A stretch of DNA of 55,877 bases. It comes from Octopus sinensis. Taxonomy: Eukaryota. Of this stretch, positions 9,141 through 49,324 are shown piece by piece; the first letter of the stretch is position 1, and every line of letters begins with the position of its first letter. The stretch covers positions 1 to 55,877 of the forward strand of contig NW_021832846.1 of assembly GCF_006345805.1 (NCBI RefSeq), read 5' to 3'. The notes below the pieces were generated by a model. That model was not told the DNA's origin, did no database searches, and saw nothing but the letters and a program-made list of their open reading frames with translations. A program made the translations under genes and the position numbers.

Positions 9141-9660
<520 letters not shown>

Positions 9661-9820
9661 AATTTCAACAATTGAGGGTAAAATTAATTAATTATTAATC
9701 AATTTCACCAAGTATTCAGTATGTAAAGGGACCATTTTAGGCGAATTCAAAATATTACATTATATATAAGGGCTTAGTAAAATAAATTACTTTGCCACAT
9801 ACTGAACTCATTAGAATAGC

Positions 9821-12195: not shown

Positions 12196-12590
12196 GCATC
12201 GAGAGTTACGCAAATGCCAGAACTGGGCGCCACTGCGTGGTGCCTAGGACTCCAAACCTGCCATCAGATGTAGGACAAGATTCTGTGATAGCCTGGGCTT
12301 CCGAGGCCCACAGCTCTTCAATATCCTCCCGAAGAACCTGAGAGACCTGCATGGGGTGGATACAGATGTCTTTAAAATGAAGCTGGATCTCTTCCTGTCA
12401 GGTGTCCCAGATGAACCAACTTCACGGCAGGAGGGGCAGATGAGGGCAGCTGCATCGAACTCTCTCATGCACCAAATAGCAGTTGCTAGAAAGCCCCCAT
12501 GAAGTGAAACCAAGTAGCAACACCAATGGTGGTGCCCCAGCATGGCCACAGCTCATAAGCTGAAACTAGAATCAATCAATCAATCAATCA
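12196..12590 (+). mobile_element. 5'-truncated CR1/L2-group LINE, C-terminus and 3' UTR with (ATCA)n tail
   Basis: Translates as GPQLFNILPKNLRDLHGVDTDVFKMKLDLFLSGVPDEP...AASNSLMHQ and ends in AATCAATCAATC. Confidence 0.75.
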
Positions 12591-12682
12591 TATGTACATA
12601 TATATATATATATATATATATGTACATATATATATATATATATATATACATATATAATATATGTACATATATATGTACATAT

Positions 12683-12724
<42 letters not shown>

Positions 12725-12728
12725 ATAA

Positions 12729-12765
<37 letters not shown>

Positions 12766-12810
12766 TATATATATATATATATAATATAATATAATATACA
12801 TATATATAAT
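12590..12810. repeat. (TA)n microsatellite
   Basis: Direct inspection. Confidence 0.95.
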
Positions 12811-18867: not shown

Positions 18868-20165
18868 AGTATAGCGTTTGCTGGTTGAGCTGTTGGTTTT
18901 GTTTGGAACACACATGTTTTTTGGTTGTCTTGGCGGTGTGATGTTTTCCCTCTTGTTTAATGTTGTGCCGTCTGAGGAAGAAGTGGTGGCGTATTTGAGG
19001 AGAACTGACGAGGGAAGGGAGTGAGGATGTGGGCAAGTTCAGGGAAGGGAAATGAAGTGAGGGTGTGTGTCCCCAAGAGGTATTAAAGGAGGGGAATGGG
19101 AGAACCATAATTTGCAGAACATGCTTGGTAGCAGCCAGGAAGATTGTAGTCATGTCAACGGCTGAAGTGGAAAAAGCACTTAAACCAATCTAGCTGTAGA
19201 AACACAATGGTAGAAAATTTGGAATGGTGGAGGTGGGGTTTCGGGAGGTAGCTGCAGACAGCAACACTATTGAGAACTGATGAAGTGGTGCTTCTATCAG
19301 TTTACCTTGGAAGGCATGCTTCCAGGATTAGGGTAGAAAACATACCCCCAGAAGTGGACATAGCCTGGCTGGTAGCTGCCATACTGCTAGGCATGGAGGA
19401 GAAGGTGGTGTCCTCCAGGACACCAGAACACCCCATAGGAACTGGCAAGGACAAAGCCTCAATACGGTGCTACAAGTTTCCGTGGAAGATATCGAAAGTA
19501 TAGTAGAGACAATTATGGTCAGAGACACAACACTGAAAATCAGAGTGGAAGAGAGGATTCCGTGTTGCTATAAATGTGGCCTAGAGGGTCACATTAGAGC
19601 GGATTGTCCTTCACCACCTGTGAAGGCTAAGGAGAGATATGAGAGTGAGAAAGTGGCTGGTGCTCCACTACCCATGGAGGTTGAGGAAAAGGAGAGTGAA
19701 GCGGTAACACAGATAAAGACCAGTACCAGCATTGAAGAAGAGGAGGTGGACAATGAAAAGGAAACAGCTAGGGAAAAGAGAAGAAAGAGAAAAACAAAAA
19801 CACACGCTGTAAAGGACGATCCCCATCCCACACCCACTCTACCCCAACCACTCCCTACACACACCTGCCCTCTCCATGTCCTACCTGACATAAGCACAAA
19901 CACACTGGAGCCCCAAATTTCCCCAGCCTCACCCTTGAAAAAATATGTTATAATGTACAGTGGAGACAATGAAGAAGTGTATACCAAAATAGACTTGTGG
20001 GGCAGTGTTATAAAAGTGGAGGAATCAAGAGTGAAAGGGATGCCCCGAGTACCTTTGTTGAGTTGTGGCAGACCCAGAATATATATCAAGATTAAAGGGC
20101 TTTGAAGAAAATCATAACTATGAGTGCTGGGTCAAGAAATTGGACTCCAGCTCAATGCCTAAGCA
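18868..20165 (+). pseudogene. Degraded gag-like ORF1 of a non-LTR retrotransposon (L1/Tx1-like), zinc knuckle
   Basis: ORF 19467-20105 contains CYKCGLEGHIRADC (CCHC knuckle); the upstream ORF 19270-19503 has RIRVENIPPEVDIAWL (RRM-like); frameshifted, with no ORF2 seen. Confidence 0.6.
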
Positions 20166-20507
20166 AGTAAGTGTTTATGATATTTTAAAGAAGCATAATG
20201 TAAACATCCTTCGGGGGAATGATAATTAGCTGTCGTTAATAATTGTGTTATAAAATTAGTATTTAAAAAAAATACATTGTATTAACAGGTTCAATTAAGT
20301 CACTCGAAGGTGGGGCAAAACGGTTTCACTTCATCTCTCACGTTTAATTCATCCTTTCCATTCGTTTCTTCTTTTTTGTCCCCTCTATATATGGCTTTCA
20401 TAGCCAATATCATGAAATAAAGGAGCTTGCTTCCAAACTACATAGTTCTAGGTTCAGTCCCACTGTGTGGCACTTTGGGCAAATGTCTTCTAATATAGCC
20501 TTGAGTC

Positions 20508-20744
20508 TGTTATAATCATCACAACAAACATGAACAATCAACGTCGCCCATTGTCTCCCTTGATAAAAGGACTTTCACTTTGTTTCCCGCCAAAACAATT
20601 AACTTGTACAACAACGGCAGTCGAATAAAGTATCTTGTATCGTTAACACGTTGCTTTCAGTCTCTCTCATTTTCTTAATCTTTCATACTAAGTACTCACT
20701 ACTTCCTTTAATACTCAATACATTATATATATATAACAACAACA
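20508..20744 (+). repeat. 5' LTR (237 bp)
   Basis: TGTTATAATC...AACAACA; differs from the 3' LTR by 3 substitutions and one 2-bp indel. Confidence 0.95.
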
Positions 20745-20755
20745 TGGTGTCAGAA
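20745..20755 (+). promoter_or_regulatory. Primer binding site of the Gypsy element
   Basis: TGGTGTCAGAA immediately after the 5' LTR (TGG complementary to tRNA 3' CCA). Confidence 0.8.
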
Positions 20756-20822
20756 TACTAAAAGAACCCAAAATACAGAAACCAAAGGAAAAAAGAAGTT
20801 GAAATCATACTTCAAAGACGAA

Positions 20823-22025
20823 ATGGAAAATTTACCACATCCAAAAGACCTAGACTTTAATCAGGAAAATCTAGCCGCAGCATGGAAAAAGTGGAAAAAA
20901 GAATTCAATCTCTTTTTGATCGCAACAGAAAGTGACATGAAGCCAGACAAAGTAAAAACTTCAATGTTTTTAACTTGCATCGGTTCTAAAGGCCGAGATA
21001 TCCATTCCACACTGGATTTCGATTCACCCGACGAAGAAATGAACCTTCAGACAGTAATCGAAAAATTCGATGCATATTGTGAACCCAGGAAAAACAACTT
21101 TCCTAAGACACAAATTCTTCACATGTGGACAAGCGGAACATCAAAAATTCGATGAGTACGTAGTAGAGTTGCGCCAAAAGGCACAACAGTGCGAATTCGG
21201 CAACCTCACAGACAGTCTCACCAAGATATTCTGATATGTGGAATCAGAGACATGAGATTAAGAGAAAGATTATTGAGAGAACCAATTTAGACCTACAAAA
21301 ACAATTCAAGCAGGTCAGAGTGCAGAGCAAACACGACTCCAATCAAGGATGCTAAATGCCACATCCGAAACAAAAGATAACGAAATCTCGAGGGTATATA
21401 GTCAACACGACAGAAAAGGCGCCAAAACCCAAAAACCCGCCATATGCAATCCAGACATCAAAACGAACAAGGCGGAAGTGACAGAAAGCCCGCGAAGTTT
21501 CAAGCGCCAAGTCAACACTATGTCACTAACTGTCACTATTGTGGTTATAATCACAAAAGAAATAAATGCCCAGCATTTCACAAGACATGTGAAAAATGCA
21601 AGAAACAAGGACACTATGCAAAAATGTGCAAATCAAGAAAATTTGTACATAAAGTAGAGATACATACCGACGATGAATCAGATAACGATACACATGCACT
21701 CGAAATGATCACTGCAAATAATTCCCGCGTGCACAAAATCGAAAAGTTCAAGACTCCAAAAGACATTTGGACGGTCGAACTAAAAGTGAACAACTCGAAT
21801 GTAACATTCAAAATAGATACAGGAGCAGACGTAACCGTACTGCCATTCAGAGAATATAGAAATATAATTCCAAAACCACAACTGCAAAAAACTTCAACTC
21901 GATTATCAGCTTATAATAACACAGCTATAAAAGTGCTAGGAAAATGCACAGCAGTCATTAAATACAAAGAATTATCAAAGCAAATAAAATTCATTGTTGC
22001 AAAAACAACTCGCACGCAGTTATAG
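20823..22025 (+). pseudogene. Gypsy gag and aspartic protease, frameshifted
   Basis: MENLPHPKDLDF...WKKWKKEF; twin knuckles CHYCGYNHKRNKC and CEKCKKQGHYAKMC; protease FKIDTGADVTV. Confidence 0.88.
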
Positions 22026-24617
22026 ATGCAAAGACAGCTAAAGATCTGAACCTGATTCAGAGAATTTCAAAAATAAATTCGTCGAACACAAACGACATAT
22101 TAGAAAAATATGAAGACTGTTTCGGAGAAATCGGCACTTTGTCAATAACACATCATATCACAGTGGATCCACAAATAACTCCTGTAATTCATCCACCAAG
22201 ATCGGTTCCTTTTTCTATAAAAGAAAAACTCAACAAAAAATTAAAAAGAATGACAGAATTAGATATCATAAAACCTGTTAGTGAACCTACAGACTGGGTA
22301 AATTCCCTAGTCATCGTTGAAAAAGCCAACGGAAAACTCCGACTCTGTTTAGACCCCAAGAATCTAAACAAAGCCATAAAAAGGCAACATTTCAAACTCC
22401 CTACAGCGGAGGACATTTTTGCACAAATGCATAACCCTAAATATTTTTCAAAACTCGATGCATCTAATGGATACTGGCAAATTCCAGTTGACGAAGAAAG
22501 CTCCCATCTTTTAACGTTCAACACACCTTTTGGAAGGTATCGCTTCACACGACTACCCTTTGGAATTCACAGCGCCAGTGAAGTTTTCCAAAAAGAAATT
22601 TCAAAAATAATAGAGGGCATAGAAGGAGCAAGAAATTCACAGGATGACATCATAATCTGGTCCAACACTTTAGAAGAACACACAAAGACTACAACAAGTT
22701 TTCGATCGAATCCGAAAGCACGGATTAAAGTTAAATAAATCAAAGTGTATCTTCTATGAATCACAAATCAAGTACCTTGGGCATATGTTAACCAGCGAAG
22801 GGATAAAACAAGATCCAACCAAGGTACAAGCAATCATTCACATGCCACTGCCAACAAGTAAAAAAGAATTACAAAGATTCCTAGGTATGACAAATTACCT
22901 ATGTAAATTTTTATCTAATTACTCCGAAGTCACAGCACCATTGCGCCAGCTTCTACAGAGTGACACGTTATGGTCATTCGACAAACCACAAATCGAAGCA
23001 ATAAAAAAGCTAAAAGAAATGATTACCAGAAAACCAGTGCTACAATTTTATGATCCAGATCTACCAATAAAAATAACTACAGATGCTAGTAAGCATGGGC
23101 TCGGAGCGATACTTGAGCAGAAACACAACGAAAGATGGCTACCTGTTTCGTTTGCATCTCGTGCAACAACTCAAGCGGAACAAAACTACTGTCCGATAGA
23201 GAGCGAAGCTCTCAGTATAGTTTTCGCATGCAAGAAATTTCATCAGTTTATATACGGAACTCATTTCAGAATCGAAAATGACCATAAACCGTTGAAGCAA
23301 ATATTCAAAAAATCGATCACTAAATGCCCCCCCCAGAATCCAAAGATTTCTACTAACATTACAAAGATATGATTTTGACCTAAACCACATACCTGGTAAA
23401 GAATCAATTGTTGCAGATACCCTATCACGTGCATACCTTGAGCAAAATACTCCAGAAGTATCAGACGAAGATATGAAATCACATTCATGCAGTAATAAAA
23501 AATTACCCCATAACCGACACGAAGTTAAAAGAGTATAAAGAAGCCACTGCAGACGACCCGTCTCTACAGACACTCGTCACATATACAAGAACAGAATGGC
23601 CCCCAAAAGACAAAATACCAATAAACATCAAACCATTCGTATCTGTTCGTGATGAAATATCAATCGTCAATGGTCTTGTTCTAAAGGTTCAAGAATAATT
23701 GTACCTAAGTCATTACGTAGAGAAGCTCTACAGGAATACATACCGGACACATGGGTATCGAAAAATGCATAGAGAGAGCCAAGGAATGTATATACTGGCC
23801 CGGCATTAACGCTCAAATCAAAGACATGATTAACACATGCTCATACTGCATTGACTACAAAAATCAACAAGCAGCCGAACCACTAATAAATCATGAAATA
23901 CCTACTACACCATGGACCAAAGTGGGTACAGACGTATTTCATCTGTCTGGAAATTCGTATGTCACAATTATTGACTATACAACAAGATTTTTTGATCTAC
24001 ATGAAATAAAAGATTGCCAGTCAAAAACCGTAATCAAAAAATTAAAAGAAACTTTTGCTAAATTCGGAATTCCGCAAACAGTTGTAAGTGACAACGGTCC
24101 AGAATTCAATTTGGCTGAATTCAAAAAATTTGCAAAAAATTGGCATTTTCATCACACGAAGACAAGCCCGCATTATCATCAAGAATGGCATGGTTGAGAG
24201 AAATATACAGACAATAAAAAGACGCTAAAAAAGGCATTCAAAAGTGGCGAAGAACCTCAGTTAGCGCTCTTAGCATTACGCACGACTAAATTACAAAATG
24301 GTGCACCATCCCCTGCAAATCAAATAATGAATAGAACATTGCGAACAAATCTCCCAAACATACTACACGACAAAATTGGTATCAGGCCTCACGAAAAGAA
24401 GAAATCAAACATTACAACAGAACTCCCAGAGTTAAAACCACACGACACGGTTAGAATTAAGTTTAACAACAATTGGTTTAGAAGGGGCAAAATAATTAAA
24501 AAACTAGAGCAACCTCGTTCATACTTAGTAATAACAGAGGAAGGAAATACAGTCAAACGAAATAGACAACATATTCTTAAAACAAACAAACACGTTCGCA
24601 TAACAGAAGAATTAGAT
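22026..24617 (+). pseudogene. Gypsy pol (RT, RNase H, integrase), split by several frameshifts
   Basis: RLCLDPKNLNKAI, FSKLDASNGYWQI, SQDDIII (RT); TTDASKHGLGAILEQ (RNase H); HTGHMGIEKC...CSYC, GTDVF, SDNGPEF, NGMVER (integrase). Confidence 0.9.
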
Positions 24618-25753
24618 TCATCATCATCATCATCGTCGTTTAACGTCCGTTCTCCATGCTAGCATGGGTTGGACGGTTCGACCGGGGTTCTGGGAAGCCA
24701 GAAGGCTGCACCAGGCTCCAGTCTAATTTGGCAATGTTTCTACAGCTGGATGCCCTTCCTAACGCCAACCACTCCGTGAGTGTAGTGGGTGCTTTTACGT
24801 GCCACCTGCACAGGTGCCAGGTGGGGCTGGCAACAGCCACGGTCAGATTGGTGTATTTTATGTGCCACCGGCACGGAAGCCAGACGGGCGGTGCTGGCAT
24901 CGGCCACGAGTTGGATAGTGCTTTTTACGTACCACCAGACCAGGGATCTGGCTGGTTCAATTCGATTTCGATTTCGCTTGCCCCAACATGTCTTCACAAG
25001 CAAAGGGGGTTGGCAAGGGTGCCTGTCGTACGGTCGCATTGGAGTATTTTACGTGCCACGGCCACGAGTCGGATAGTGCTTTTTACGTACCCCCAGACCA
25101 GGGATCCTGGCTGGTTCAATTCGATTTCGATTTCGATTTCGCTTGCCCCAACATGTCTTCACAAGCAAAGGAGGTTGGCATGGGTGCCTGTCGTACGGTC
25201 GCATTGGAGTATTTACGTGCCACGGCCATGAGTCGGATAGTGCTTTTTACGTACCACCAGGCCAGGGATCCTGGCTGGTTCAATTCGGTTTCGATTTCGA
25301 TTTCGCTTGCCCCAACATGTCTTCGCAAGCATGGGGGGTTGGCATGGGTGTCTGTCGTCGGATGAGGTTCTATATCGACTTCACTTGCCTCAGCCGGTCT
25401 TTGTGTCCAAGGGAGGAAAGGCATTCATAAGTGGGCTGGGCTCACTTGTCCTGCCTGGTCTTCTCACGTACAGAATATTTCCAAAGGTCTCGGTCTCTGG
25501 TCATTTCCTCAGTGAGGCCTAAAGTTCGAAGGTCGTGCTTCACCACCTCGTCCCAGGTTTTCCTGGGTCTACCTCTCCCACGGGTTCCCTCAACTGCTAG
25601 GGATTGGCACTTTCTCACACACCTATCTTCATCCATTCTCGCCACATGGCCATACCAGCGCAATCGTCTCTCTTGCACACCACAACTGATGCTTCTTAGG
25701 TACAACATTTCTCTCAAGGTGCTAACGCTCTGTCGAGTATGTACACTGACATT
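24618..25753 (-). mobile_element. 5'-truncated RTE LINE nested inside the Gypsy element
   Basis: ORF end LRSISCGVQERRLRWYGHVARMDEDRCVRK...GRGRPRKTWDEVVKHDL* (stop at 25442), a long 3' UTR with internal ~140-bp triplication, and a (GAT)n tail at 24618. Confidence 0.85.
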
Positions 25754-26760: not shown

Positions 26761-27029
26761 CTAGGCTTTAAAAGGGCGCATTTATTTATTATTTTAATAA
26801 TTTATTGGTGATATTTTGGTCTAAGTATGACAATGGTTAAAATTTTACCGGCTGATTTCCCTAGATTCTTGGCAGTTAACGGAATTTCTTTTTCTTCTTC
26901 GTCTGCTGTTGATTGCCAAACATGCATGTCATTCATCTGCTTGAAATTGCCAGACACTCACACATATATCCTTACTCAGTGCGTGTTGGGCATAGAATGA
27001 GGACATGGATCGCTTCTACTCAACCATAA

Positions 27030-30000
27030 CCCTTTTGATACCAACCTGGTTGAAACCTGCTCTGGCTCTGAGTACAAATGTCTTGTTTTCATAAGTTCTG
27101 AATTAAAATCTTCCACCAAATCTTAGTCACAACTTATGTTCCTAACACTAGCTTAATGATAACCAGTTATTTTACTAAATTCTTTGTTATATTTTACTCT
27201 TTTGATACCAACCTGGTTGAAACCACCTCTGGCTCTGTAATACAAATGTCTTGTTTTCATAAGTTCTGAATTAAAATCTTCCACCAAATCTTAGTCACAA
27301 CTTATGTTCCTAACACTAGCTTAATGATAACCAAGTTATTTTACTAAATTCTTTGTTATATTTTACTCTTTTGATACCAGCCTGGCTGAAACCACCTCTG
27401 GCTCTGTAATACAAATGTCTTGTTTTCATAAGTTCTGAATTAAAATCTTCCACCAAATCTTAGTCACAACTTATGTTCCTAACACTAGCTTAATGATAAC
27501 CAAGTTATTTTACTAAATTCTTTGTTATATTTTACTCTTTTGATACCAGCCTGGCTGAAACCACCTCTGGCTCTGTAATACAAATGTCTTGTTTTCATAA
27601 GTTCTGAATTAAAATCTTCCACCAAATCTTAGTCACAACTTATGTTCCTAACACTAGCTTAATGATAACCAAGTTATTTTACTAAATTCTTCGTTATATT
27701 TTACTCTTTTGATACCACCTGGCTGAAACCACCTCTGGCTCTGTAATACAAATGTCTTGTTTTCATAAGTTCTGAATTAATATCTTCCACCAAACCTTAG
27801 TCACAACTTATGTTCCTAACACTAGCTTAATGATAACCAAGTTATTTTACTAAATTCTTTGTTATATTTTACTCTTTTGATACCAACCTGGTTGAAACCA
27901 CCTCTGGCTCTGTAATACAAATGTCTTGTTTTCATAAGTTCTGAATTAAAATCTTCCACCAAATCTTAGTCACAACTTATGTTCCTAACACTAGCTTAAT
28001 GATAACCAAGTTATTTTACTAAATTCTTTGTTATATTTTACTCTTTTGATACCAGCCTGGCTGAAACCACCTCTGGCTCTGTAATACAAATGTCTTGTTT
28101 TCATAAGTTCTGAATTAAAATCTTCCACCAAATCTTAGTCACAACTTATGTTCCTAACACTAGCTTAATGATAACCAAGTTATTTTACTAAATTCTTTGT
28201 TATATTTTACTCTTTTGATACCAGCCTGGCTGAAACCACCTCTGGCTCTGTAATACAAATGTCTTGTTTTCATAAGTTCTGAATTAAAATCTTCCACCAA
28301 ACCTAGTCACAACTTATGTTCCTAACACTAGCTTAATGATAACCAAGTTATTTTACTAAATTCTTTGTTATATTTTACTCTTTTGATACCAACCTGGCTG
28401 AAACCACCTCTGGCTCTGTAATACAAATGTCTTGTTTTCATAAGTTCTGAATTAAAATCTTCCACCAAATCTTAGTCACAACTTATGTTCCTAACACTAG
28501 CTTAATGATAACCAAGTTATTTTACTAAATTCTTTGTTATATTTTACTCTTTTGATACCAACCTGGCTGAAACCACCTCTGGCTCTGTAATACAAATGTC
28601 TTATTTTCAAAAGTTCTGAATTAAAATCTTCCACCAAACCTTAGTCACAATTTATGTTCCTAACACCAGCTTAATGATAAATAAGTTATTTTACTAAATT
28701 CTTTGTTATATTTTACTCTTTTGATACCAACCTGGCTGAAACCACCTCTGGCTCTGTAATACAAATGTCTTATTTTCAAAAGTTTTGAATTAAAATCTTC
28801 CACCAAACCTTAGTCACAATTTATGTTCCTAACACTAGCTTAATGATAACCAAGTTATTTTACTAAATTCTTTGTTATATTTTACTCTTTTGATACCAAC
28901 CTGGCTGAAACCACCTCTGGCTCTGTAATACAAATGTCTTGTTTTCATAAGTTCTGAATTAAAATCTTCCACCAAACCTTAGTCACAACTTATGTTCCTA
29001 ACACTAGCTTAATGATAACCAAGTTATTTTACTAAATTCTTTGTTATATTTTACTCTTTTGATACCAACCTGGCTGAAACCACCTCTGGCTCTGTAATAC
29101 AAATGTCTTGTTTTCATAAGTTCTGAATTAAAATCTTCCACCAAATCTTAGTCACAACTTATGTTCCTAACACTAGCTTAATGATAACCAAGTTATTTTA
29201 CTAAATTCTTTGTTATATTTTACTCTTTTGATACCAGCCTGGCTGAAACCACCTCTGACTCTGTAATACAAATGTCTTGTTTTCATAAGTTCTGAATTAA
29301 AATCTTCCACCAAACCTTAGTCACAATTTATGTTCCTAACACTAGCTTAATGATAACCAAGTTATTTTACTAAATTCTTTGTTATATTTTACTCTTTTGA
29401 TACCAACCTGGCTGAAACCACCTCTGGCTCTGTAATACAAATGTCTTGTTTTCATAAGTTCTGAATTAAAATCTTCCACCAAACCTTAGTCACAACTTAT
29501 GTTCCTAACACTAGCTTAATGATAACCAAGTTATTTTACTAAATTCTTTGTTATATTTTACTCTTTTGATACCAACCTGGCTGAAACCACCTCTGGCTCT
29601 GTAATACAAATGTCTTGTTTTCATAAGTTCTGAATTAAAATCTTCCACCAAACCTTAGTCACAACTTATGTTCCTAACACTAGCTTATGATAACCAAGTT
29701 ATTTTACTAAATTCTTTGTTATATTTTACTCTTTTGATACCAACCTGGCTGAAACCACCTCTGGCTCTGTAATACAAATGTCTTGTTTTCATAAGTTCTG
29801 AATTAAAATCTTCCACCAAACCTTAGTCACAACTTATGTTCCTAACACTAGCTTAATGATAACCAAGTTATTTTACTAAATTCTTTGTTATATTTTACTC
29901 TTTTGATACCAACCTGGCTGAAACCACCTCTGGCTCTGTAATACAAATGTCTTGTTTTCATAAGTTCTGAATTAAAATCTTCCACCAAACTTAGTCACAA

Positions 30001-31412
30001 CTTATGTTCCTAACACTAGCTTAATGATAACCAAGTTATTTTACTAAATTCTTTGTTATATTTTACTCTTTTGATACCAACCTGGCTGAAACCACCTCTG
30101 GCTCTGTAATACAAATGTCTTGTTTTCATAAGTTCTGAATTAAAATCTTCCACCAAATCTTAGTCACAACTTATGTTCCTAACACTAGCTTAATGATAAC
30201 CAAGTTATTTTACTAAATTCTTTGTTATATTTTACTCTTTTGATACCAGCCTGGCTGGCTGAAACCACCTCTGACTCTGTAATACAAATGTTGTTTTCAT
30301 AAGTTCTGAATTAAAATCTTCCACCAAACCTTAGTCACAATTTATGTTCCTAACACTAGCTTAATGATAACCAAGTTATTTTACTAAATTCTTTGTTATA
30401 TTTTACTCTTTTGATACCAACCTGGCTGAAACCACCTCTGGCTCTGTAATACAAATGTCTTGTTTTCATAAGTTCTGAATTAAAATCTTCCACCAAACCT
30501 TAGTCACAACTTATGTTCCTAACACTAGCTTAATGATAACCAAGTTATTTTACTAAATTCTTTGTTATATTTTACTCTTTTGATACCAACCTGGCTAAAA
30601 CCACCTCTGGCTCTGTAATACAAATGTCTTGTTTTCATAAGTTCTGAATTAAAATCTTCCACCAAACCTTAGTCACAACTTATGTTCCTAACACTAGCTT
30701 AATGATAACCAAGTATTTTACTAAATTCTTTGTTTATTTTACTCTTTTGATACCAACCTGGCTGAAACCACCTCTGGCTCTGTAATACAAATGTCTTGTT
30801 TTCATAAGTTCTGAATTAAAATCTTCCACCAAACCTTAGTCACAACTTATGTTCCTAACACTAGCTTAATGATAACCAAGTTATTTTACTAAATTCTTCA
30901 TTATATTTTACTCTTTTGATACCACCTGGCTGAAACCACCTCTGGCTCTGTAATACAAATGTCTTGTTTTCATAAGTTCTGAATTAAAATCTTCCACCAA
31001 ACCTTAGTCACAACTTATGTTCCTAACACTAGCTTAATGATAACCAAGTTATTTTACTAAATTCTTTGTTATATTTTACTCTTTTGATACCAACCTGGCT
31101 GAAACCACCTCTGACTCTGTAATACAAATGTCTTGTTTTCATAAGTTCTGAATTAAAATCTTCCACCAAACCTTAGTCACAACTATGTTCCTAACACTAG
31201 CTTAATGATAACCAAGTTATTTTACTAAATTCTTTGTTATATTTTACTCTTTTGATACCAACCTGGCTGAAACCACCTCTGGCTCTGTAATACAAATGTC
31301 TTGTTTTCATAAGTTCTGAATTAAAATCTTCCACCAAACCTTAGTCACAACTTATGTTCCTAACACTAGCTTAATGATAACCAAGTTATTTTACTAAATT
31401 CTTTGTTATATT
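27030..31412 (+). repeat. Satellite, about 26 tandem copies of a 169-bp unit
   Basis: GATACC recurs at 27037, 27204, 27373, 27542, 27711, 27879, 28048 and onward (period 167-169), with only a few differences between units. Confidence 0.97.
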
Positions 31413-31564
31413 TAAAGTAATTGAAAGAAACACAGAGCATCTCGACAGAAATATGGTAAAGAAACGGTTAAGGGAGGACTGAGCAAGAAGGAAGCAGGCC
31501 AGCAAGATAATGAGGAGCAATAAACCATGGTTTATGTCACCACAATTCCTACAGGCATATTCAG

Positions 31565-31760
31565 TCAGCAATTCACGCGCGCACGCACACACACATTGTC
31601 CCGCGCGCGAACGTTCTTACTATGTATAACTTATGTGAGCCTTCGCGCGCGCGCATTTGTTTTCCAAGCGAGATAACTCCGTTGTCCTTTGCCATTTCGG
31701 CTCTCCTCATTTCGGAGACGACAACAGCCTCGTTGTTTCTGCTTGGTTACAAAATGGCGT
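31565..31760 (+). promoter_or_regulatory. CpG-rich promoter and 5' UTR of AATF
   Basis: Cluster of CGCG runs (CACGCGCGCACG, CCCGCGCGCG, TTCGCGCGCGCGC) in otherwise CpG-poor DNA; YY1-like CAAAATGGCG overlapping the ATG. Confidence 0.65.
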
Positions 31761-31832
31761 TGAGCGATCTTTTGGATTCTCTCGCCAAACCGAATCCCAC
31801 CTTTCCCGACGGAGACGAGGACTTTGGGGACA
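31754..31832 (+). CDS. AATF: Protein AATF/Che-1/Bfr2, coding exon 1
   Basis: MALSDLLDSLAKPNPTFPDGDEDFGD + A|GTAAGT donor (phase 1); resembles the AATF N-terminus (L..LL.P.P). Confidence 0.85.
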
Positions 31833-35808: not shown

Positions 35809-35982
35809 ATACGACAGCGCAGCTCAGCGTCCACGGAACAGAAGATGATGCGAAAGATGGCGATCAGATACAGAAGTCAACAAAGCTGAAGAGACAAGCT
35901 GCTTCACTGTTATCCGACACAGATACAAGGTATGCTGGGCGGAAGACTACGAGGAAAGACCTGATGCAGGATTCTGGAAAAG
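35809..35982 (+). CDS. AATF: AATF coding exon 2
   Basis: CAG acceptor and G|GTAAGT donor; (N)TTAQLSVHG...KLKRQAASLLSDTDTRYAGRKTTRKDL matches AATF RKLASASLLDTDKRYCGKTTSRK. Confidence 0.92.
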
Positions 35983-36197
35983 GTAAGTAGGCTGTGTGTT
36001 TGTGAGTGTATCTGTACTGTTCCAGGTGTGTTTTACTCGGGAAGGAAAAAATTGTGGATTTCATTTGGAAATAATTATTCAGTATTAATTGAAGTGAAGA
36101 TAATAATTTGCTGTTAATAATAAACAGTTATTAAATTCTCAATCTCCATTTTCTTTTTCTTCTTTTATATGAATATAACTATATATATATATATATC

Positions 36198-36527
36198 AGC
36201 CAGGATCCCTGGTCTGGTGGTACGTAAAAAGCACTATCCGACTCGTGGCCGATGCCAGCGCCGCCTCGACTGGCTTCCGTGCCGGTGGCACGTAAAATAC
36301 ACCAATCCGACCGTGGCCGTTGCCAGCCTCGCCTGGCACCTGTGCAGGTGGCACGTAAAAAGCACCCACTACACTCGCGGAGTGGTTGGCGTTAGGAAGG
36401 GCATCCAGCTGTAGAAACATTGCCAGATAAGACTGGAGCCTGGTGCAGCCTTCTGGCTTCCCAGATCCCCGGTCGAACCGTCCAACCCATGCTAGCATGG
36501 AGAACGGACATTAAACGATGATGATGA

Positions 36528-36530
<3 letters not shown>
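36198..36530 (+). mobile_element. RTE-LINE 3'-UTR fragment with (GAT)n tail
   Basis: Matches the reverse complement of 24618-24960. Confidence 0.8.
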
Positions 36531-36584
<54 letters not shown>

Positions 36585-37091: not shown

Positions 37092-37281
37092 TATTCCTCT
37101 CTCAGATTCACACACTTCTTACAGCGGTCCTTCAGTTTTACTAAGCCCTGTAAAAGAACTCAGAAGGTTGGGTCTCTAACCAGACCTTTCGTGATACCCT
37201 TAAAGCCAGGGACTTTTCGGCAACTCCTTGTAAGATGAATAGCTCTAGCTCGAGCAAGTTCATTAACTGCCAACGTGTTAA

Positions 37282-37498
37282 CCCTTTTGTTACCATATTT
37301 CTGTTGAGATGCTCTGTGTTTCTTTCAATTACTTTAAATATAACAAAGAATTTAGTAAAATAACTTAGTTATCATTAAGCTAGTGTTAGGAACAAATTGT
37401 GACTAAGGTTTAGTGGAAGATTTTAATTCAGAACTTATGAAAACAGGACATTTGTACTCAGAGCCAGAGGTGGTTTCAGCCAGGTTGGTATCAAAGGG
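37282..37498 (-). mobile_element. 217-bp piggyBac-like MITE; monomeric form of the 169-bp satellite
   Basis: TTAA-CCCTTTTGTTACC ... GGTATCAAAGGG-GTAA; the internal sequence is the reverse complement of the satellite unit plus its 3' flank. Confidence 0.7.
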
Positions 37499-37581: not shown

Positions 37582-37750
37582 GTGACAGTGAAGATGGCGT
37601 GTCGTCACATGACAATGATGATGATGATGAAGATGGTGAAGAAGATGATGATGATGCTGAAGATGGTGAAGAAGATGATGATGATAGTAATGATGGTGAT
37701 GAAGATATTGCAGGCTTCCGTCAACTCCTACAGAAGAAATCTCTCGGAAG
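37582..37750 (+). CDS. AATF: AATF coding exon 3 (acidic region)
   Basis: TAG acceptor and AG|GTAAGG donor; phases 1 to 2 fit; DSEDGVSSHDNDDDDEDGEE...LLQKKSLG. Confidence 0.85.
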
Positions 37751-37869: not shown

Positions 37870-38712
37870 ACATTAGACAGTGTAGTCCAAGATACATATA
37901 GTTTCAATAAAAGACAAAATGATCACAGTTGGAACATCTTTGACTATAGGTCTCTCTCTGCTGGATCAGGACTGACCTGGGGCTAAATAACAATAGCAGC
38001 TATGGTCACTAATAGTAGCTATTATCCATGAGATAATGTAGTCCTAGATATACTGTGTCTGAATAAAAGAAGGGATGGTCATAGGTGGAACAGCTTTGAT
38101 CATGTCTGCTGGATCAGGACTGACCTAGGGCTAAATAACAATAGCAGCTATGGTCACTAATAGTAGCTACTATACATGAGATGATGTAGTCCTAGATATA
38201 CACTGTCTCAATAAAAGAAGGGATGGTCACAGGTGGAACATCTTTGATCATGTCTGCTGGGTCAGGACTGACCTGGGGTTAAATAACAATAGCAGCTATG
38301 GTCACTAATAGTAACTACTAAACTACATGTTAAATAATGTAGTCCTAGATACACTGTCTCTGAATAAAAGAAGGGATGGTCACAGGAGGAATGTCTTTGA
38401 TCATAGTGTCTGCTGGACCACAGCTGACCCAGGGCTAAACAGCAACAACTATAGTCGCTGATACTAACTGCTAGATGTTAGATGATGTAGACCAAGATAT
38501 GCTATCTCTGAATAAAAGATGTGGTGGTCACATCTGGAACGTCTTTGATCATATGCCTGCTGGATCAGGATTGACCTGGGCTAAACAACAAATATAGCCA
38601 CTAACACCAACTACTATAATATACATTAACTGATGTAGTCCTAGATATACTAAGTATGAATATAAGATAGGATGGTCACTGCTGGAATGTCTTTGATTAT
38701 AGGCCTCGCTAG
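37870..38712 (+). repeat. About 5-6 diverged tandem copies of a ~148-bp unit
   Basis: GCTGG(A/G)(T/C)CA..(A/G)CTGACC at 37960, 38108, 38256, 38412 and 38559. Confidence 0.85.
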
Positions 38713-38754
38713 TGTATCGGGACTGGCCTCGAGCTAAACTCTTTCTCTCTCTTT

Positions 38755-39489: not shown

Positions 39490-42020
39490 CAGTAGTCTTA
39501 TTCTTATCACGTGCTTTCACTTCACTACCGAGCGCAGCTCTGTGTGCCTTGGGTATGTGCTGTGATTTGTTGTGATGCTCTGATGGTTATTGTATGGAAA
39601 GTGTTCTGCGTAGGATGTGTGAAGTGCCTAGTAGTGCAATTTTCTGTATGGTATATGTGTTTGTAAGTCCTGGTGTTTTTGTTATGTATTTGTCTGAATA
39701 TTTTTTATCATGCCTAATGCACCTACTATGATAGGAATTGTTTCTGTTTTCAGGTTCCACATTCTAGTTACCTCTATTTCCAGGTCTTTGTATTTTGAGA
39801 GTTTCTCCATTTCTTTTAGAGACACGTTGTCATCTGCCGGTATTGATACATCAATTAGAAAGCATTTTTTTTCTTCATGATTTCTGACAACTATATCTGG
39901 TCTGTTGGCCTTAATTTCTCTCTCAGTGTGTATCGGCAAATCCCAGAGTATGGTTGCTTTCTCGTTTTCTGTGACCTTTTCTGGTGTGTGCCTATACCAT
40001 CTTTTTTCTGTTGTTATTCCATAATGTTGGCATAGTTTCCAGTGTATGTAGGTTCCAACTCTGTCGTGTCTGTGAATATATTCCTTCTTAGCCAGGACTG
40101 GGCAGCTAGAGATAATATGATTTATTGTTTCTTGTCCATCTCCACATATTCTGCAGTTACTTGTAATATTTCTTTTCATTACATGTTTTTGGTAATTTCT
40201 GGTGGGGAGGCTTTGGTCTTGTGCTGCAATTAAAAATCCCTCTGTTTCTGCTTTGAGTCCTGAGCTTCTCAACCATTGCTGGGATTTTTCTTTGTCTATT
40301 TCTTTTGCGTTTAGTTTAGTCCAGTATTTACCATAAAGGGGCTTTTCTTGCCATCGTTTTATCATGGTTCGTTGCTGTTCTATTTTTAGTTTGGATTTCA
40401 TTTGTTTTATAGCTTTTGTTGTTTCTTCATCTTCTTCTTCATATTTGTTAGGTGGTATGATTTCTTGTTTGTATTTGTCAGCTTCCTTAAATACTGAGAA
40501 CAGTTTTTTGTTTTGCTCGTGTTTTGTCGCTATTTGTATCAGTTTTCCTTCCTTCTGAAGTAGATATTTTTGCAGTCTTATCGTGGTTATTTATAGTAGT
40601 TTTCCAGCTGTATAAGGCCTCTACCACCTTCTATACGTTGTATATATAGTCTTTCTATGTCAGATTTTGGGTGATTATTTTTCTTGTTTTCCTATCTATT
40701 TTGGTCAGTTCATTTAGTGTCCAGTTAAGGATATTGTAGCTGTAACTTATAACTGGGACAGCTAAAGTGTTAATACCTATTATCTTGGTTTTATCTAGTG
40801 TGATGTTGCTACTCTTAATTAGTTTTCCTCTTTTCAGGGTTACTTTGGCGCATTTTTCTAATCCAAATTTCATATCTATTTCTTTGGTAAATCCATGAAC
40901 TGTCTTTAATAGTTTTCCAGCTGTATAAGGCCTCTACCACCTTCTATACGTTGTATATATAGTCTTTCTATGTCAGATTTTGGGTGATTATTTTTCTTGT
41001 TTTCCTATCTATTTTGGTCAGTTCATTTAGTGTCCAGTTAAGGATATTGTAGCTGTAACTTATAACTGGGACAGCTAAAGTGTTAATACCTATTATCTTG
41101 GTTTTATCTAGTGTGATGTTGCTACTCTTAATTAGTTTTCCTCTTTTCAGGGTTACTTTGGCACATTTCTCTAATCCAAATTTCATATCTATTTCTTTGG
41201 TAAATCCATGAACTGTCTTTAATAGTGTTTCCAGCTGTTTGTCATTTGCAGCGTGTAGTTTTAGGTCATCCATATATAAAAGGTGGCTGATCGTTTTGCC
41301 GTAACATTTATATCCGCATCCAGTTCTGTTTAGCATATCCGATAGAGGTCACAGTGCCAAGCAGAAAAGGAGTGGAGAGAGCGTGTCTCCCTGGAATATT
41401 CCTCTTCTGATGGGGATGGCTTTGGTTTTCATGAGTCCTTCTTTTGTTTGGAGCTGTAGCACTGTTTGCCATTTATTCATAGAGTGCCCTATGTACTTTA
41501 TAATTGTTGATGCTACTTTGTTAATGGCTAATGTTTCGAGGATTCATGTGTGAGGGATGCTATCAAACGCCTTTTTGTAGTCGATCCAGGCCATACTGAG
41601 GCCTTTCTTCTTTCTGTGGCTGTCTTCAGTTATGGCTTTATTAATCATTAGTTGATCTTTACAGCCATATGAGCCTTTGCGGCATCTTTCTGCTCTTCTG
41701 GAAACAGGTTGTTTTCGTCCAGGTGCTTGTTCAATCTTTGCGATATCATTGCAGTAAATGCCTTGTACATAGTAGGGAGACAGGTATTGGTCTGTAGTTT
41801 TCTGGTTTTGCTGTCTCATTTGATTTGGGAATTAAGATGGTTTTCCCCTTCGTGAGCCATTCAGGCATTGTCTCTGGCTCTGCTAGTATGCTGTTAAAGT
41901 TTTCAGCCAGCTTTTTGTGCATTCCTGTTAGATATTTCAACCAGAAGTTGGGGATCTTGTCATGCCCAGGTGCCTTCCAGTTGCTTAGTCTTTGCAGTGC
42001 CTGGGGGTCCAAAGTTCCCC
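39490..42020 (-). mobile_element. R4/Dong-clade LINE (RT + CCHC + restriction-like endonuclease), rearranged, in (TAA)n
   Basis: KAPGHD, GSYGCKDQL, DYKKAFDSIPH, LLYMDDLKL (RT); CRICGDGQETINHIISSC (zinc knuckle); RPDIVV...LIDVSIP...EKLSKYKDL (RLE); flanked by TAA repeats on both sides. Confidence 0.88.
40600..41225. repeat. 313-bp tandem duplication inside the Dong-like element
   Basis: Identical peptide MKFGLEKCAKVTLKRG...TQNLT in ORFs 40655-40873 and 40968-41336, offset by 313 bp. Confidence 0.9.
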
Positions 42021-42128
42021 GCCTCATATTGTTATTATTATTATTGTTATTGTTATTATTATTATTGTTATTATTATCATTGTTATTATTTTTATTATAT
42101 CATTATTATTGTTATTATTATTATTATT

Positions 42129-42683
42129 GAGTGAGAGAGCAGTGCATGCCATCAAAGTGACACTGGGGTAAAATATACGAAGCCCAGTTTACCCATCATG
42201 ACCACCCGTCTGATAAGGGTACACCAGGTACATGCATCACAACCATATGTGCATGGCACGGTGATCTCATATCAAGATAAACAGTGCATGACTTTGGTGG
42301 TGGGGCCCAGTTAGAATTTTCTTCTGGTCGAGTAGCCCATCCTGCTCAAAAGGTCCCTGAATAAGGGTTGTTTAAGGATGTTGAATGAAACACCCATGTT
42401 TCCAGAGGTGAATTATTCAAGCCCCAAAGAATCCCTCTCGACACATGGCTCTGATGCTCCCCTACTACTTCTGCTCGTGATCAGAGATGCACATATCGTC
42501 AGCCACTAAGGGACATGCTCAACAGGTTAAGGTCAAACAACTGACAAGCAAATCTGTGGTATTGAGCAGAATATTTGCTGTAGCCCATCTTTTATACCAA
42601 GACAAAACAATGTACATGATAACACTTCCAATCAGTTAAGATCAGAAGCCATGAGAGCCACTGCCTGGTACTGCATCAGGGCA
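42129..42683 (-). mobile_element. ~555-bp non-coding element bounded by (TAA)n, copy 1
   Basis: GAGTGAGAGAGCAG...CTGGTACTGCATCAGGGCA; further copies at 46659-47148, 47634-48187 and 48717-49271. Strand is inferred from the adjacent Dong fragment. Confidence 0.7.
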
Positions 42684-42929
42684 TTTATTATTATTATTAT
42701 TATTATTATCACTAAGGCAAGCTAGCAGAGTTGTTAGCGCACTGTTAGCAGTTTTTCGCTCATCTCTACATTCTGAGTTCAAATTCTGCCAAGGTCAACT
42801 TAGTCTTTCGATCTTTCAAAGTCAATGAATTAAGTACTACTTACAAACTGGGGTTGATAGAACCAGATAGCACCCCACCCTCTTCCAATTTTAGGCCTTG
42901 TATCTCTAGTGGAAAGGATTATTATTATT

Positions 42930-46155: not shown

Positions 46156-47149
46156 GTAAGACAGCAAAAATATTATTATTATTATTAAAGGCTGCAAGTT
46201 GGAAGACTCATTAACATGCTGGGCAAAATGCTAAAGACCATTTTGTCCATCTTTGCTTTCTGAGTTCAAATTCTGCTAAGGTTGACTTTGCTTTTTGTCC
46301 TTTTAGGGGTCAATAAAATAAGTACCATTTGATCTTTGGGGTCAATACAATCAACTTAGCCCCTCCCCCCCTAAAGAATTACTGCCCTTGTGCCAAGATT
46401 TGAAACCATTATTAGTAGTAGTAGTATCATGGTAGCAAGCTGGCAGACTCATTAGTATGCTGGGAAAAATGTTTAGTGGTATTTCTTCCAGATTTACATT
46501 CTGAGGTCAACTTTGCCTTTCATCTTTTTGGGCCCAATAAAATGAAGTACCAGTGAAGCAGTAGGGACAATATTAACAACTTACTCCTCCTTTCAAACTG
46601 CTGGCTTGAGCCTAAATTTGAAACCATTATTATTATTATTATTATTATCATTATTATTGAGTGAGAGAGCAGTGCATTCCATCAAAGTGACACTGGGGTA
46701 AAATATACGAAGCCCAATATACCCATCATGACTACCCGTCTGATAAGGGTACACCAGGCACATGCATTACAACCATATGTGTGCGACATGGTGATCTCAT
46801 ATCAAGATAAACAGTGCATGACCTTGCAGGTGGGGCCCAGTTAGAATTTTCTTCTGGTCGAGTAACCCATCCCACTCAAAAGGTCCCTGAATAAGGGTTG
46901 TTTAAGGATGTTGAATGAAACACCAATGTTTCCAGAGGCTATGATGCTCCCCCACTACTTCTGCTCATGATCAGAGATGCACGTATCGTCAGCCACTAAG
47001 GGACATGCTCAACTGGTTACGGTCAAACAACTGACAAGCAAATCTGTGGTATTGTGCAGAATATTTGTTGTAGCCCATCTTTTTATACCAAGACAAAACA
47101 ATGTACATGATAACACTTCCAATCGGTTAAGATCAGAAGCCATGAGAGT

Positions 47150-48399: not shown

Positions 48400-48430
<31 letters not shown>

Positions 48431-49289
48431 TTATTTTTATTATTATTATCATTATTATTATTATTATTATCATTATTATTATCATTATTATTATTATTAT
48501 TATTATTATTGCAAGCTGATAGAATCGTTAGCACACCAGGTGAAATGCTTAGCAGTATTTCAGCTGCTGTTCCATCTGAGTTCAGATTCCGCTGAGGTCA
48601 GCTTTGCCTTTCATCTTTTCGTGGTCAATAAATTAAGTACCAGTGAAACACCAGAGTTGATGTAATCAACACATCCCTTCTGGCAAAAATTTGAAAACAT
48701 CATTATTATTATTATTGAGTGAGAGAGCAGTTCATGCCATCAAAGTGACACTGGGGTAAAATATACGAAGCCCAGTATACCCATCATGACTACCCGTCTG
48801 ATAAGGGTAAACTAGGCACATGCATCACAACCATGTGTGTGTGACATGGTGATCTCATATCAAGATAAACAGCAGATGACCTTGTAGGAGGGGTCCAGTT
48901 AGAATTTTCTTCTAGTCGAGTAGCCCATACCGCTCAAAAGGTACCTGAATAAGGGTTGTTTAAGGATGTTGAACGAAACACCCATGTTTCCAGAGGTGAA
49001 TTATTCAAATCCCAAAGAATGCCTCTCAACACATGGCTATGATGCTCACCCACTACTTCCTGCATGGGATCAGAGATGCACATATCGTCAGCCACTAAGG
49101 GACATGCTCAACTGGTTAAGGTCAAACAACTGACAAGCAAATCTGTGGTATTGAGCAGAATATTTGCTGTAGCCCATCTTTTATACCAAGACAAAACAAT
49201 GTACATGATAACACTTCCAATCAGTTAAGATCAGAAGCCATGAGAGCCACTGCCTGGTACTGCATCAGGCATCATTATTATTATTATTA

Positions 49290-49324
<35 letters not shown>

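What the first reader, a model, noticed from the sequence alone, without database searches (positions are those of the whole stretch)
27030..31467. 4.4-kb satellite born inside a 217-bp piggyBac-like MITE, next to the AATF promoter
Seen: the array starts with the MITE left end (CCCTTTTGATACC) and, after about 26 x 169-bp units, finishes with the unique right part and GG-TTAA. An unamplified monomer of the same element lies at 37282-37498 (minus). The element ends about 100 bp from the CpG-rich promoter and about 290 bp from the ATG. Known: MITEs can seed satellites. Inference: a satellite caught early, with progenitor and product in one locus, positioned where copy number or heterochromatin could affect an essential ribosome-biogenesis gene. 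The unit length is close to a nucleosome-plus-linker repeat.
Basis: partly seen in the sequence, partly recalled or inferred. Interest (0 to 1): 0.7.

Follow-up and report, generated by a model that had tools for sequence, protein, structure and literature searches.

The report
Transposon fragment amplified beside AATF promoter
One small non-coding DNA transposon inserted 283 bp upstream of the AATF start codon has had its first 169 bp copied head-to-tail 26 times; the structure is real and neatly bounded by transposon landmarks, but this kind of event is well known and nothing here shows it affects the gene.

Summary
Window 27030-31467 is one transposon-like element whose first 169 bp is repeated 26 times (97% match). 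It starts with the left inverted repeat CCCTTTTGATACC and ends with a 52-bp unique tail plus TTAA. A 217-bp unamplified sibling, 94.5% identical, lies at 37282-37498 (-) in AATF intron 2.

New here: the unit runs from the element's first base to an internal TTAA (element positions 166-169). The unit-to-unit junction has the length predicted for 'internal TTAA + left terminus' and matches it at 20 of 22 bases. Edge units keep ancestral states. There are 19 unit haplotypes and block duplications, which fits one founding dimer expanded by unequal exchange.

CCCT/AGGG termini, a 13-bp TIR and TTAA flanks fit piggyBac rather than Kolobok. Only two copies are visible, and both left-hand TTAAs are one base off.

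The gene is AATF (PDB 7mq8, E = 5e-32), and the stated distances are right.

The unit has no CpG and no 10-bp nucleosome-type periodicity. The host element is already decayed, so 'caught early', 'progenitor in the same locus' and any effect on AATF are unsupported. Transposon-derived tandem arrays are well documented, so this is a new member of a known kind, of low to moderate interest.

The parts
27026..27029 (+). Left flank ATAA, the presumed decayed copy of the TTAA target-site duplication
   Evidence: Sequence. It is one base off TTAA; 4-mers within one mismatch of TTAA occur at 8.1% of window positions.
27030..27042 (+). Left terminal inverted repeat CCCTTTTGATACC of the array-bearing element
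   Evidence: Matches the reverse complement of the solo copy's right end (CCCTTTTGTTACC) at 12/13; chance about 5e-7.
27030..27196 (+). Unit 1, the edge unit. It keeps ancestral states shared with the solo copy (CCC terminus, GAGTAC) and has private changes.
   Evidence: Alignment of all units with the solo copy; 8/169 differences from the array consensus.
27197..31246 (+). Units 2-25, 167-171 bp each, carrying the derived states CTC and GTAATAC. Each starts with a left-TIR copy and ends at the mutated junction TTTA.
   Evidence: Among all 26 units: 19 haplotypes; u2=u6, u3=u7, u9=u13=u19, u12=u15=u17=u21.
31247..31415 (+). Unit 26, which ends in the intact internal TTAA (31412-31415) and continues into the tail
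   Evidence: TTAA at element position 166 in both copies; sequence.
31416..31467 (+). Unique right part of the element, present once. It includes the degenerate right TIR GGTAAAGAAACGG (31455-31467).
   Evidence: Aligns with the right 52 bp of the solo copy with 4 mismatches.
31468..31471 (+). Right flank TTAA (target-site duplication)
   Evidence: Sequence. Exact TTAA occurs at 0.65% of window positions and is present at the right end of both copies.
31560..31760 (+). CpG-rich putative AATF core promoter and 5' UTR
   Evidence: GC 0.507, 21 CpG, o/e 1.66 against a window mean of 0.55.
31754..31832 (+). AATF exon 1 coding part (MALSDLLDSLAKPNPTFPDGDEDFGD), with donor GTAAGT at 31833
   Evidence: Sequence. 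The N-terminus aligns weakly with human AATF residues 11-105.
35809..35982 (+). AATF exon 2
   Evidence: Splice sites read. It carries the 'DTDTRYAGRKTTRK' motif, aligned to human AATF.
37282..37498 (-). Solo (unamplified) sibling element, 217 bp, in AATF intron 2, 83 bp upstream of the exon 3 acceptor. TTAA lies at 37278-37281; the other flank is TTAC or TTTA.
37582..37750 (+). AATF exon 3 (acidic tract)
   Evidence: Splice sites read.

Best explanation
One small non-autonomous DNA transposon, about 221 bp with piggyBac-type ends, inserted at a TTAA 283 bp upstream of the AATF start codon. Its left 169 bp was later duplicated in place. That segment runs from the first base of the left inverted repeat to an internal TTAA. 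The duplication gave a dimer with a single junction, 'internal TTAA joined to left terminus'.

The founding step could have occurred in three ways:
- a microhomology-mediated exchange or template switch between the flanking TTAA and the internal TTAA;
- a second insertion of the element followed by a TTAA-to-TTAA deletion;
- a transposase-made joint.

The dimer acquired a few substitutions (junction TTAA to TTTA, CCC to CTC, GAGTAC to GTAATAC). Unequal sister-chromatid exchange or replication slippage then expanded it to 26 units, including multi-unit block duplications.

Internal units carry only left ends, so a transposase cannot excise them as units. The array is most likely a neutral or nearly neutral structural feature tolerated just upstream of a compact CpG-island promoter. 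It is not a demonstrated regulator of AATF.

Shown: the structure, boundaries, junction, variant pattern, gene identity and distances. Inferred: the order of events, the founding mechanism and neutrality.
For: - Structure and boundaries.
- Independent definition of the ends: homology with the solo copy starts at CCC and stops after GGG(+TTAA), and the flanks are unrelated.
- The unit ends where the element has an internal TTAA (positions 166-169), which is conserved in the solo copy.
- 22 of 25 junctions read TGTTATATTTTACTCTTTTGAT. The prediction is TGTTATATTTAACCCTTTTGAT: same length, 20/22 identical.
- Unit 1 keeps the ancestral 5' states and unit 26 keeps the ancestral TTAA. That is what unequal exchange from a single dimer predicts.
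- Units differ from each other by 2.4% on average, but their consensus differs from the solo copy by 7% (12/169).
- Identical non-adjacent units and lag-4 blocks show multi-unit duplications.
- TSD-bearing junctions, loss of TIR sequence at junctions, expansion by unequal exchange and enrichment near transcription start sites are documented for DNA-transposon tandems (PMC5932611).
- Other in-situ tandem amplifications lie in the same window.
- No CpG in the unit, no 10-bp periodicity and no Rfam hit.
Against: - The junction reads TTTA-CTC, not TTAA-CCC. Two substitutions must be assumed, or the joint was imprecise from the start.
- Both copies have a one-off left TTAA (ATAA; TTTA or TTAC).
- Only two family members are visible, so mobility, copy number and the cognate transposase are untested.
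- The source genome and its relatives could not be reached. Presence or absence at the orthologous site, copy-number polymorphism and other arrays are therefore unknown.
- Neutrality is an assumption. No expression or chromatin data exist here.
- Some 1-bp length variants lie in short homopolymer runs and could be sequencing errors.
Confidence: 0.7

Rival explanations
1. The array belongs to a mobile, tandem-repeat-containing element family or to a genome-wide satellite. Families like DTC84/pearl, miDNA4 or Xmix/Xstir have variable internal repeat numbers. On this view the element arrived already carrying repeats, or the locus is one of many arrays.
For: Such families are common, especially in molluscs and Xenopus (PMC3879986; PMC12628747; PMC9659126). 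Two family members lie within 6 kb, which suggests the family may be abundant.
Against: In those families the repeats are central and sit between left and right modules. Here each unit includes the left terminus itself. Only one array and one single-unit copy are visible. Unit 1 and the tail keep ancestral states, as expected for local growth.
Confidence: 0.15
2. One reading: array copy number or array-nucleated heterochromatin modulates the adjacent AATF promoter, helped by a nucleosome-sized unit.
For: Proximity only. The element ends about 105 bp from the CpG island and 283 bp from the ATG. The unit length of 169 bp falls in the common satellite monomer range.
Against: The unit has 0 CpG and the whole array has 3 CpG in 4438 bp, so CpG methylation cannot mark it. 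There is no 10-bp WW periodicity, no structured-RNA match and no conservation or expression data. An essential housekeeping gene with an intact CpG island downstream of the insertion argues for tolerance rather than control.
Confidence: 0.07
3. The copy number is an assembly artefact: a short array of a few units was over-expanded by the assembler.
For: Long near-identical arrays are error-prone. Several 1-bp unit-length variants lie in homopolymer runs. No reads are available.
Against: There are 19 distinct unit haplotypes. Substitution variants are shared in ordered blocks: a left domain with T and a right domain with C at the AAAYCTT site, with u2-u3 equal to u6-u7. That is not what a looped collapse or expansion of identical units gives.
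Confidence: 0.08
4. Reverse direction: a pre-existing 169-bp satellite came first, and the 217-bp 'MITE' is a monomer plus adjacent sequence that was dispersed.
For: Satellite monomers with flanks can be dispersed by mobile elements (PMC5139131, listed).
Against: The unit's first 13 bases are the inverted complement of the end of the unique tail (12/13 in the solo copy). The tail occurs once, at the array edge. The unit ends at a TTAA. A transposon-first history explains all three observations, and a satellite-first history explains none.
Confidence: 0.03

Closest known systems
Xmix MITE / Xstir tandem repeats of Xenopus (Hikosaka & Kawahara 2000, 2004; summarised in PMC12628747 and PMC6004289)
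   Same: A TTAA-targeting MITE whose partial sequence is amplified in tandem. MITE, array and composite MITE+array forms coexist.
   Different: Xmix is a T2-MITE now assigned to Kolobok, with purine AGGRR termini. This element ends in CCCT...AGGG. Xstir is a genome-wide family, whereas here only one locus is seen. The proposed Xstir mechanism is stem-loop excision between neighbouring elements, not a terminus-to-internal-TTAA joint.
Coral CMITE tandem arrays, piggyBac-type MITEs (PMC2872659)
   Same: piggyBac hallmarks (13-14 bp TIR, CC[C/T]T terminus, TTAA), with the elements found in tandem arrays.
   Different: CMITE arrays consist of full-size elements, sometimes with spacers, and are attributed to replication slippage. 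Here the unit is a truncated element (1-169 of about 221 bp) lacking the right end.
Tandem dimers and arrays of DNA transposons by double insertion (P, hobo, Bari1; McGurk & Barbash 2018, PMC5932611)
   Same: Target-site sequence at the junction; deletions that remove TIR sequence at the junction; all junctions identical because they descend from one dimer; expansion by unequal exchange; bias toward promoters.
   Different: Those are full-length or nearly full-length autonomous elements in Drosophila. Here it is a MITE with 52 bp, including the right TIR, missing from every internal unit.
miDNA4 (Xenopus tropicalis Tc1/mariner MITE with internal satellite; Scalvenzi & Pollet 2014, via PMC12628747)
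   Same: A single-monomer form and expanded forms occur in one family, and short AT-rich microhomologies bound the repeat.
   Different: A different superfamily. The repeat is internal and does not include the TIR.
Bivalve tandem-repeat-containing MITEs (DTC84, pearl/CvA, BIV160; PMC3879986)
   Same: Short arrays of monomers of about 150-170 bp inside non-autonomous elements, with a link to satellites.
   Different: Modular L-repeat-R architecture with up to about 5 repeats, whereas here there are 26 units that begin with the terminus itself.

Membership tests
piggyBac/TTAA MITE | Terminal inverted repeats of 12-19 bp (PMC2872659) | tested here: met
   Left CCCTTTTGATACC against the solo copy's right end (reverse complement) CCCTTTTGTTACC: 12/13, chance about 5e-7. 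The array element's own right TIR is degraded (CCGTTTCTTTACC).
piggyBac/TTAA MITE | CC[C/T]T terminal motif (PMC2872659) | tested here: met
   CCCT at 27030 and CCCT at the solo copy's right end. The solo copy's left end is CCCC or CCCT depending on alignment. The array element's right end is CCGT, one change away.
piggyBac/TTAA MITE | TTAA target-site duplication on both sides | tested here: inconclusive
   The right flank is TTAA in both copies. The left flanks are ATAA and TTTA/TTAC, each one base off. Background: exact TTAA 0.65%, within one mismatch 8.1%.
piggyBac/TTAA MITE | Short, non-coding, many homogeneous copies; evidence of mobility (empty sites); cognate transposase with matching ends | not testable with these tools
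   The element is 217-221 bp with no meaningful ORF, but only two copies are in the window. The source genome could not be reached.
Kolobok / T2-MITE (the other TTAA-targeting superfamily) | Purine (RR, AGGRR) terminal sequence (PMC6004289) | tested here: not met
   The element begins with CCCT, not AG/RR.
Satellite DNA | Head-to-tail tandem monomers homogenised within the array | tested here: met
   26 units. Mean pairwise difference is 2.4% within the array, against 7% between the array consensus and the solo copy.
Satellite DNA | High genomic abundance, long arrays, multiple loci or heterochromatin | not testable with these tools
   Only one 4.4-kb array is visible, with no other copies in the 55.9-kb window and no genome access.
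TE tandem formed through a target-site-bearing junction (double-insertion class) | Target-site sequence preserved at every unit junction | tested here: inconclusive
   The junction carries TTTA where TTAA is predicted. Length is exact and 20/22 bases match; 22/25 junctions are identical.
AATF / Che-1 / Bfr2 gene | AATF-Che1 domain and full-length similarity to AATF | tested here: met
   PF13339, E = 1.7e-12. Human Protein AATF 7mq8_NN, E = 5e-32 in three collinear stretches; yeast Bfr2, E = 6.9e-10.

The most novel reading that the evidence does not exclude
The founding duplication was made by the transposase itself. Both breakpoints fall on the only two kinds of site a piggyBac transposase acts on: the element terminus and a TTAA. 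One possibility is a one-ended or sister-chromatid transposition. The other is self-insertion of the left end into the element's own internal TTAA. Either would directly create a dimer that lacks a right end at the joint, and so could not be excised. That would be a transposase-catalysed route to satellite birth, distinct from slippage or double insertion, and I found no description of it for piggyBac in the papers read.
Probability: 0.2. Interest if true: 0.5.

Novelty: new member of a known kind. Interest (0 to 1): 0.25.

Why it matters
The locus is a clean, fully readable example of how a tandem array starts from a transposon. Both original ends, the sibling element, the single founding junction and the ancestral edge units are all preserved, so the order of events can be read from one sequence.

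If a genome-wide census showed that independent arrays of this family all break at the terminus and at a TTAA, that would point to a transposase-made founding step. If the copy number varies between individuals, the site would be a natural test of how much spacer a compact housekeeping promoter tolerates.

As it stands, it adds an example and not a principle.

Tried and rejected
Attempts to reach more of the genome or orthologous loci all failed:
- A protein search with AATF exons found no candidates.
- Exact-product look-ups found nothing for the 46-aa ORF present in each unit, the ORF containing exon 1 and an intact 239-aa LINE ORF.
- A metagenome scan with a 29-mer identical in the units and the solo copy gave 0 hits.
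- The upstream gypsy RT found only relatives at 75% identity or less. One of them was a 1.2-kb Logan contig of no use.

No orthologous locus, further family copy or organism name could therefore be obtained.

Other negative results:
- Rfam: no family at gathering threshold anywhere in the window.
- A literature search for the literal TIR and SINE-like motif gave one irrelevant primer match.
- Nucleosome-phasing signal: absent.
- Hairpin potential of the solo element: the TIRs pair, but overall folding is no better than shuffles (z = -0.9).
- Higher-order repeat: TRF lists period 337 with the same score, but mean differences by lag show no consistent periodicity. I rejected a higher-order structure in favour of sporadic block duplications.
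- Nested self-insertion as the sole mechanism: it predicts two copies of the right tail separated by TTAA. Only one is present, so it would need an extra deletion.
- A second gene sharing the promoter: upstream lies only a degraded gypsy element and SINE-like clusters.
Full report
**1. Observation**

Tandem Repeats Finder reports one dominant array in the window: 27032-31413, period 169, 26.0 copies, 97% matches, no indels in the consensus alignment, score 8357. Anchoring on TTTGATACC gives 26 unit starts spaced 167-171 bp.

The array begins at 27030 with CCCTTTTGATACC, preceded by ...CAACCATAA. After unit 26 the sequence leaves the repeat at ...TTGTTATATTTAA|AGTAATTG and runs through a unique 52-bp tail ending ...GGTAAAGAAACGG at 31467, followed by TTAA.

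A 217-bp copy on the minus strand at 37282-37498 aligns end to end with 'unit 26 + tail' at 94.5% identity. Its flanks are unrelated to the array's flanks, so the two copies independently define the element's ends. BLASTN and a TIR scan find no further copy or fragment in the window.

**2. Anatomy of the element**

- Left end: CCCTTTTGATACC.
- Solo copy's right end, reverse-complemented: CCCTTTTGTTACC, a 12/13 match. The chance of that for two random 13-mers of this composition is about 5e-7.
- Array element's own right end: degraded to CCGTTTCTTTACC.
- Right flank: TTAA in both copies. Exact TTAA occupies 0.65% of window positions.
- Left flanks: ATAA for the array, and TTTA or TTAC for the solo copy depending on a 1-bp alignment choice. 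Each is one base from TTAA. The background for 'within one mismatch' is 8.1%.
- The element is non-coding. The 46-aa TTG-initiated ORF in each unit is a by-product of repetition.

**3. Which superfamily**

The literature gives the piggyBac hallmarks as 12-19 bp TIRs, a CC[C/T]T terminus and TTAA duplications (PMC2872659).

TTAA is also the target of Kolobok, whose Xenopus T2-MITEs end in purines (AGGRR) (PMC6004289). The CCCT...AGGG termini therefore favour piggyBac and fail the Kolobok criterion.

With only two copies, imperfect left TTAAs and no access to the genome or a transposase, I call it 'piggyBac-type by its ends'. I do not count it as a demonstrated family member.

**4. What was amplified, and the junction**

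The repeated unit starts at the element's first base. It ends exactly at one of the element's three internal TTAAs (element positions 166-169; the others are at 75 and 125), and this TTAA is conserved in the solo copy.

Twenty-two of 25 unit junctions read TGTTATATTTTACTCTTTTGAT. Joining the internal TTAA to the left terminus predicts TGTTATATTTAACCCTTTTGAT, which has the same length and is identical at 20 of 22 bases.

As rough, post hoc arithmetic, the chance that a random tandem duplication overlapping the element starts at the terminus and ends at a TTAA is about 1e-4. That comes from about 1/390 for the start multiplied by about 3/217 for the end. The boundaries are therefore very unlikely to be arbitrary.

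Three routes give this joint:
- (a) A microhomology-mediated exchange or template switch between the 5' flanking TTAA and the internal TTAA. This directly yields the observed structure with a single tail.
- (b) Double insertion at the same TTAA, followed by a TTAA-to-TTAA deletion that removes the upstream copy's tail. Junction deletions that remove TIR sequence are common in DNA-transposon dimers (PMC5932611).
- (c) A transposase-made joint, by one-ended or sister-chromatid transposition or by self-insertion.

A simple nested self-insertion predicts tail-TTAA-tail at the right edge. That is not seen, so it would need an additional deletion. The sequence cannot separate (a), (b) and (c).

**5. 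Growth of the array**

The alignment of all units with the solo copy gives these results:
- Unit 1 keeps the ancestral CCC terminus and GAGTAC, both shared with the solo copy.
- Units 2-26 all carry CTC and GTAATAC.
- Unit 26 keeps the ancestral TTAA.

A single dimer expanded by unequal exchange predicts exactly this. All junctions descend from one junction. The 5' part of the first unit and the 3' end of the last cannot be copied inward.

Other measures:
- Mean pairwise difference among units is 4.1 sites (2.4%).
- The unit consensus differs from the solo copy at 12/169 sites.
- Unit 1 differs from the consensus at 8/169 sites.
- There are 19 haplotypes among the 26 units.
- u2=u6, u3=u7, u9=u13=u19 and u12=u15=u17=u21 are identical sets, showing multi-unit block duplications.

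A left domain (units 1-9) is enriched for T at the AAAYCTT site, while the right domain has the ancestral C. This ordered variation argues against a trivial assembly loop. Several 1-bp length variants lie in short homopolymer runs and may be read errors, and the exact copy number cannot be verified without reads.

**6. Age**

The host element is not young:
- Its right TIR has three differences from the sibling's.
- Its left TSD is mutated.
- The junction and unit 2 accumulated at least four changes before expansion.

The expansion itself is more recent, as shown by four identical consensus units. 'Caught early' is therefore only relatively true. The solo copy is a separate, oppositely oriented insertion about 6% diverged. 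It is a sibling, not the progenitor.

**7. Genomic context**

Downstream ORFs encode AATF:
- Pfam AATF-Che1 (PF13339), E = 1.7e-12.
- Human 'Protein AATF' in PDB 7mq8, E = 5e-32, in three collinear stretches that include exon 1.
- Yeast Bfr2, E = 6.9e-10.

Exon coordinates read from the splice sites:
- exon 1 coding sequence 31754-31832;
- exon 2 35809-35982;
- exon 3 37582-37750.

The gene runs off the window. The solo element lies in intron 2, 83 bp upstream of exon 3.

Region 31560-31760 is the strongest CpG island in the window (o/e 1.66, against a window mean of 0.55). The element's TTAA ends 283 bp before the ATG and about 105 bp before the first CGCG. Upstream of the array there is only a degraded Ty3/gypsy element (19467-24662) and SINE-like clusters, with no second gene.

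The window contains several other in-situ tandem amplifications:
- units of about 1.8-2.9 kb in 1-8810;
- 148 bp x 5-6 in intron 3;
- units of about 1.05 kb in 46407-49776.

Local tandem duplication is therefore a general feature here.

**8. Function**

Nothing in the sequence supports a regulatory role:
- The unit has no CpG, and the array has 3 CpG in 4438 bp (o/e 0.03). CpG methylation therefore cannot mark it.
- There is no 10-bp WW periodicity: 3075 of 5000 shuffles reach the observed power. The 169-bp length is a coincidence within the usual satellite monomer range.
- No Rfam family matches.

I commit to a neutral or nearly neutral array tolerated just upstream of a compact housekeeping promoter. 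Internal units have left ends only, so they cannot be excised as units. That may favour persistence, as argued for TIR-deficient tandems in PMC5932611; applying it here is my inference.

**9. Comparison with what is known**

Transposon-to-satellite transitions are extensively reviewed (PMC12628747; PMC9659126). The closest cases are:
- Xmix/Xstir: a TTAA-targeting MITE with partial amplification, now classed as Kolobok.
- Coral piggyBac-type CMITEs: arrays of full-size elements.
- miDNA4.
- Bivalve DTC84 and pearl.
- Drosophila P, hobo and Bari1 tandems, with TSD-bearing or TIR-deleted junctions.

This case differs in detail. It is a piggyBac-type MITE whose unit includes the left terminus and ends at an internal TTAA, and every stage is visible at one locus. 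It is the same kind of event, so I rate it a new member of a known kind.

**10. Limits**

The organism was not identified. Family copy number, other arrays, empty sites, polymorphism and expression effects therefore remain untested.

Noticed in passing
window 1-8810: Four to five copies of a segment of about 1.8-2.9 kb at 92-97% identity (for example 4912-6315 against 6676-8078, 96.4%). Each carries (TATG)n, (AT)n and (CA)n microsatellites. This is a large tandem or segmental amplification.
   Followed up: partly
window 37871-38739: A second tandem array, 148 bp x 5-6 at 77-80% identity, in AATF intron 3. It starts about 120 bp after exon 3 and about 370 bp from the solo element. Its origin was not examined.
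   Followed up: partly
window 46407-49776: A unit of about 1.0-1.08 kb repeated three times (80-86% identity). Each copy carries an (ATT)n tract of about 100 repeats, and related pieces lie at 42098-42709.
   Followed up: no
window 19467-24662 (+): A degraded Ty3/gypsy retrotransposon, with gag zinc knuckle, protease, RT, RNase H and integrase ORFs broken by frameshifts. The closest public RT relatives are only 73-75% identical.
   Followed up: partly
window 24640-25430; also 36169-36563, 51800-52136, 53671-54700, 55321-55620: GC-rich clusters of a SINE-like motif of about 66 bp (GGTGCTTTTTATGTGCCACC...), locally tandem (164 bp x 2.8 at 24901-25358; 66 bp x 4.6 at 55321-55620). No Rfam family matched.
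   Followed up: no
window 39682-42027 (-): A LINE-like element with an intact 239-aa ORF (zf-RVT, PF13966) and a 313-bp internal duplication at 99% identity (40597-41238), inside an AATF intron.
   Followed up: no
window 9133-9661 and 12590-12808, 6283-6486: Very long (TA)n/(AT)n dinucleotide tracts, up to about 269 repeats.
   Followed up: no
window 37282-37498 vs 27030-31467: Two members of the same MITE family lie within 6 kb of each other in opposite orientation. Both are within 300 bp of an AATF exon (exon 1 and exon 3). It is unknown whether this reflects high family density, local hopping or chance.
   Followed up: no
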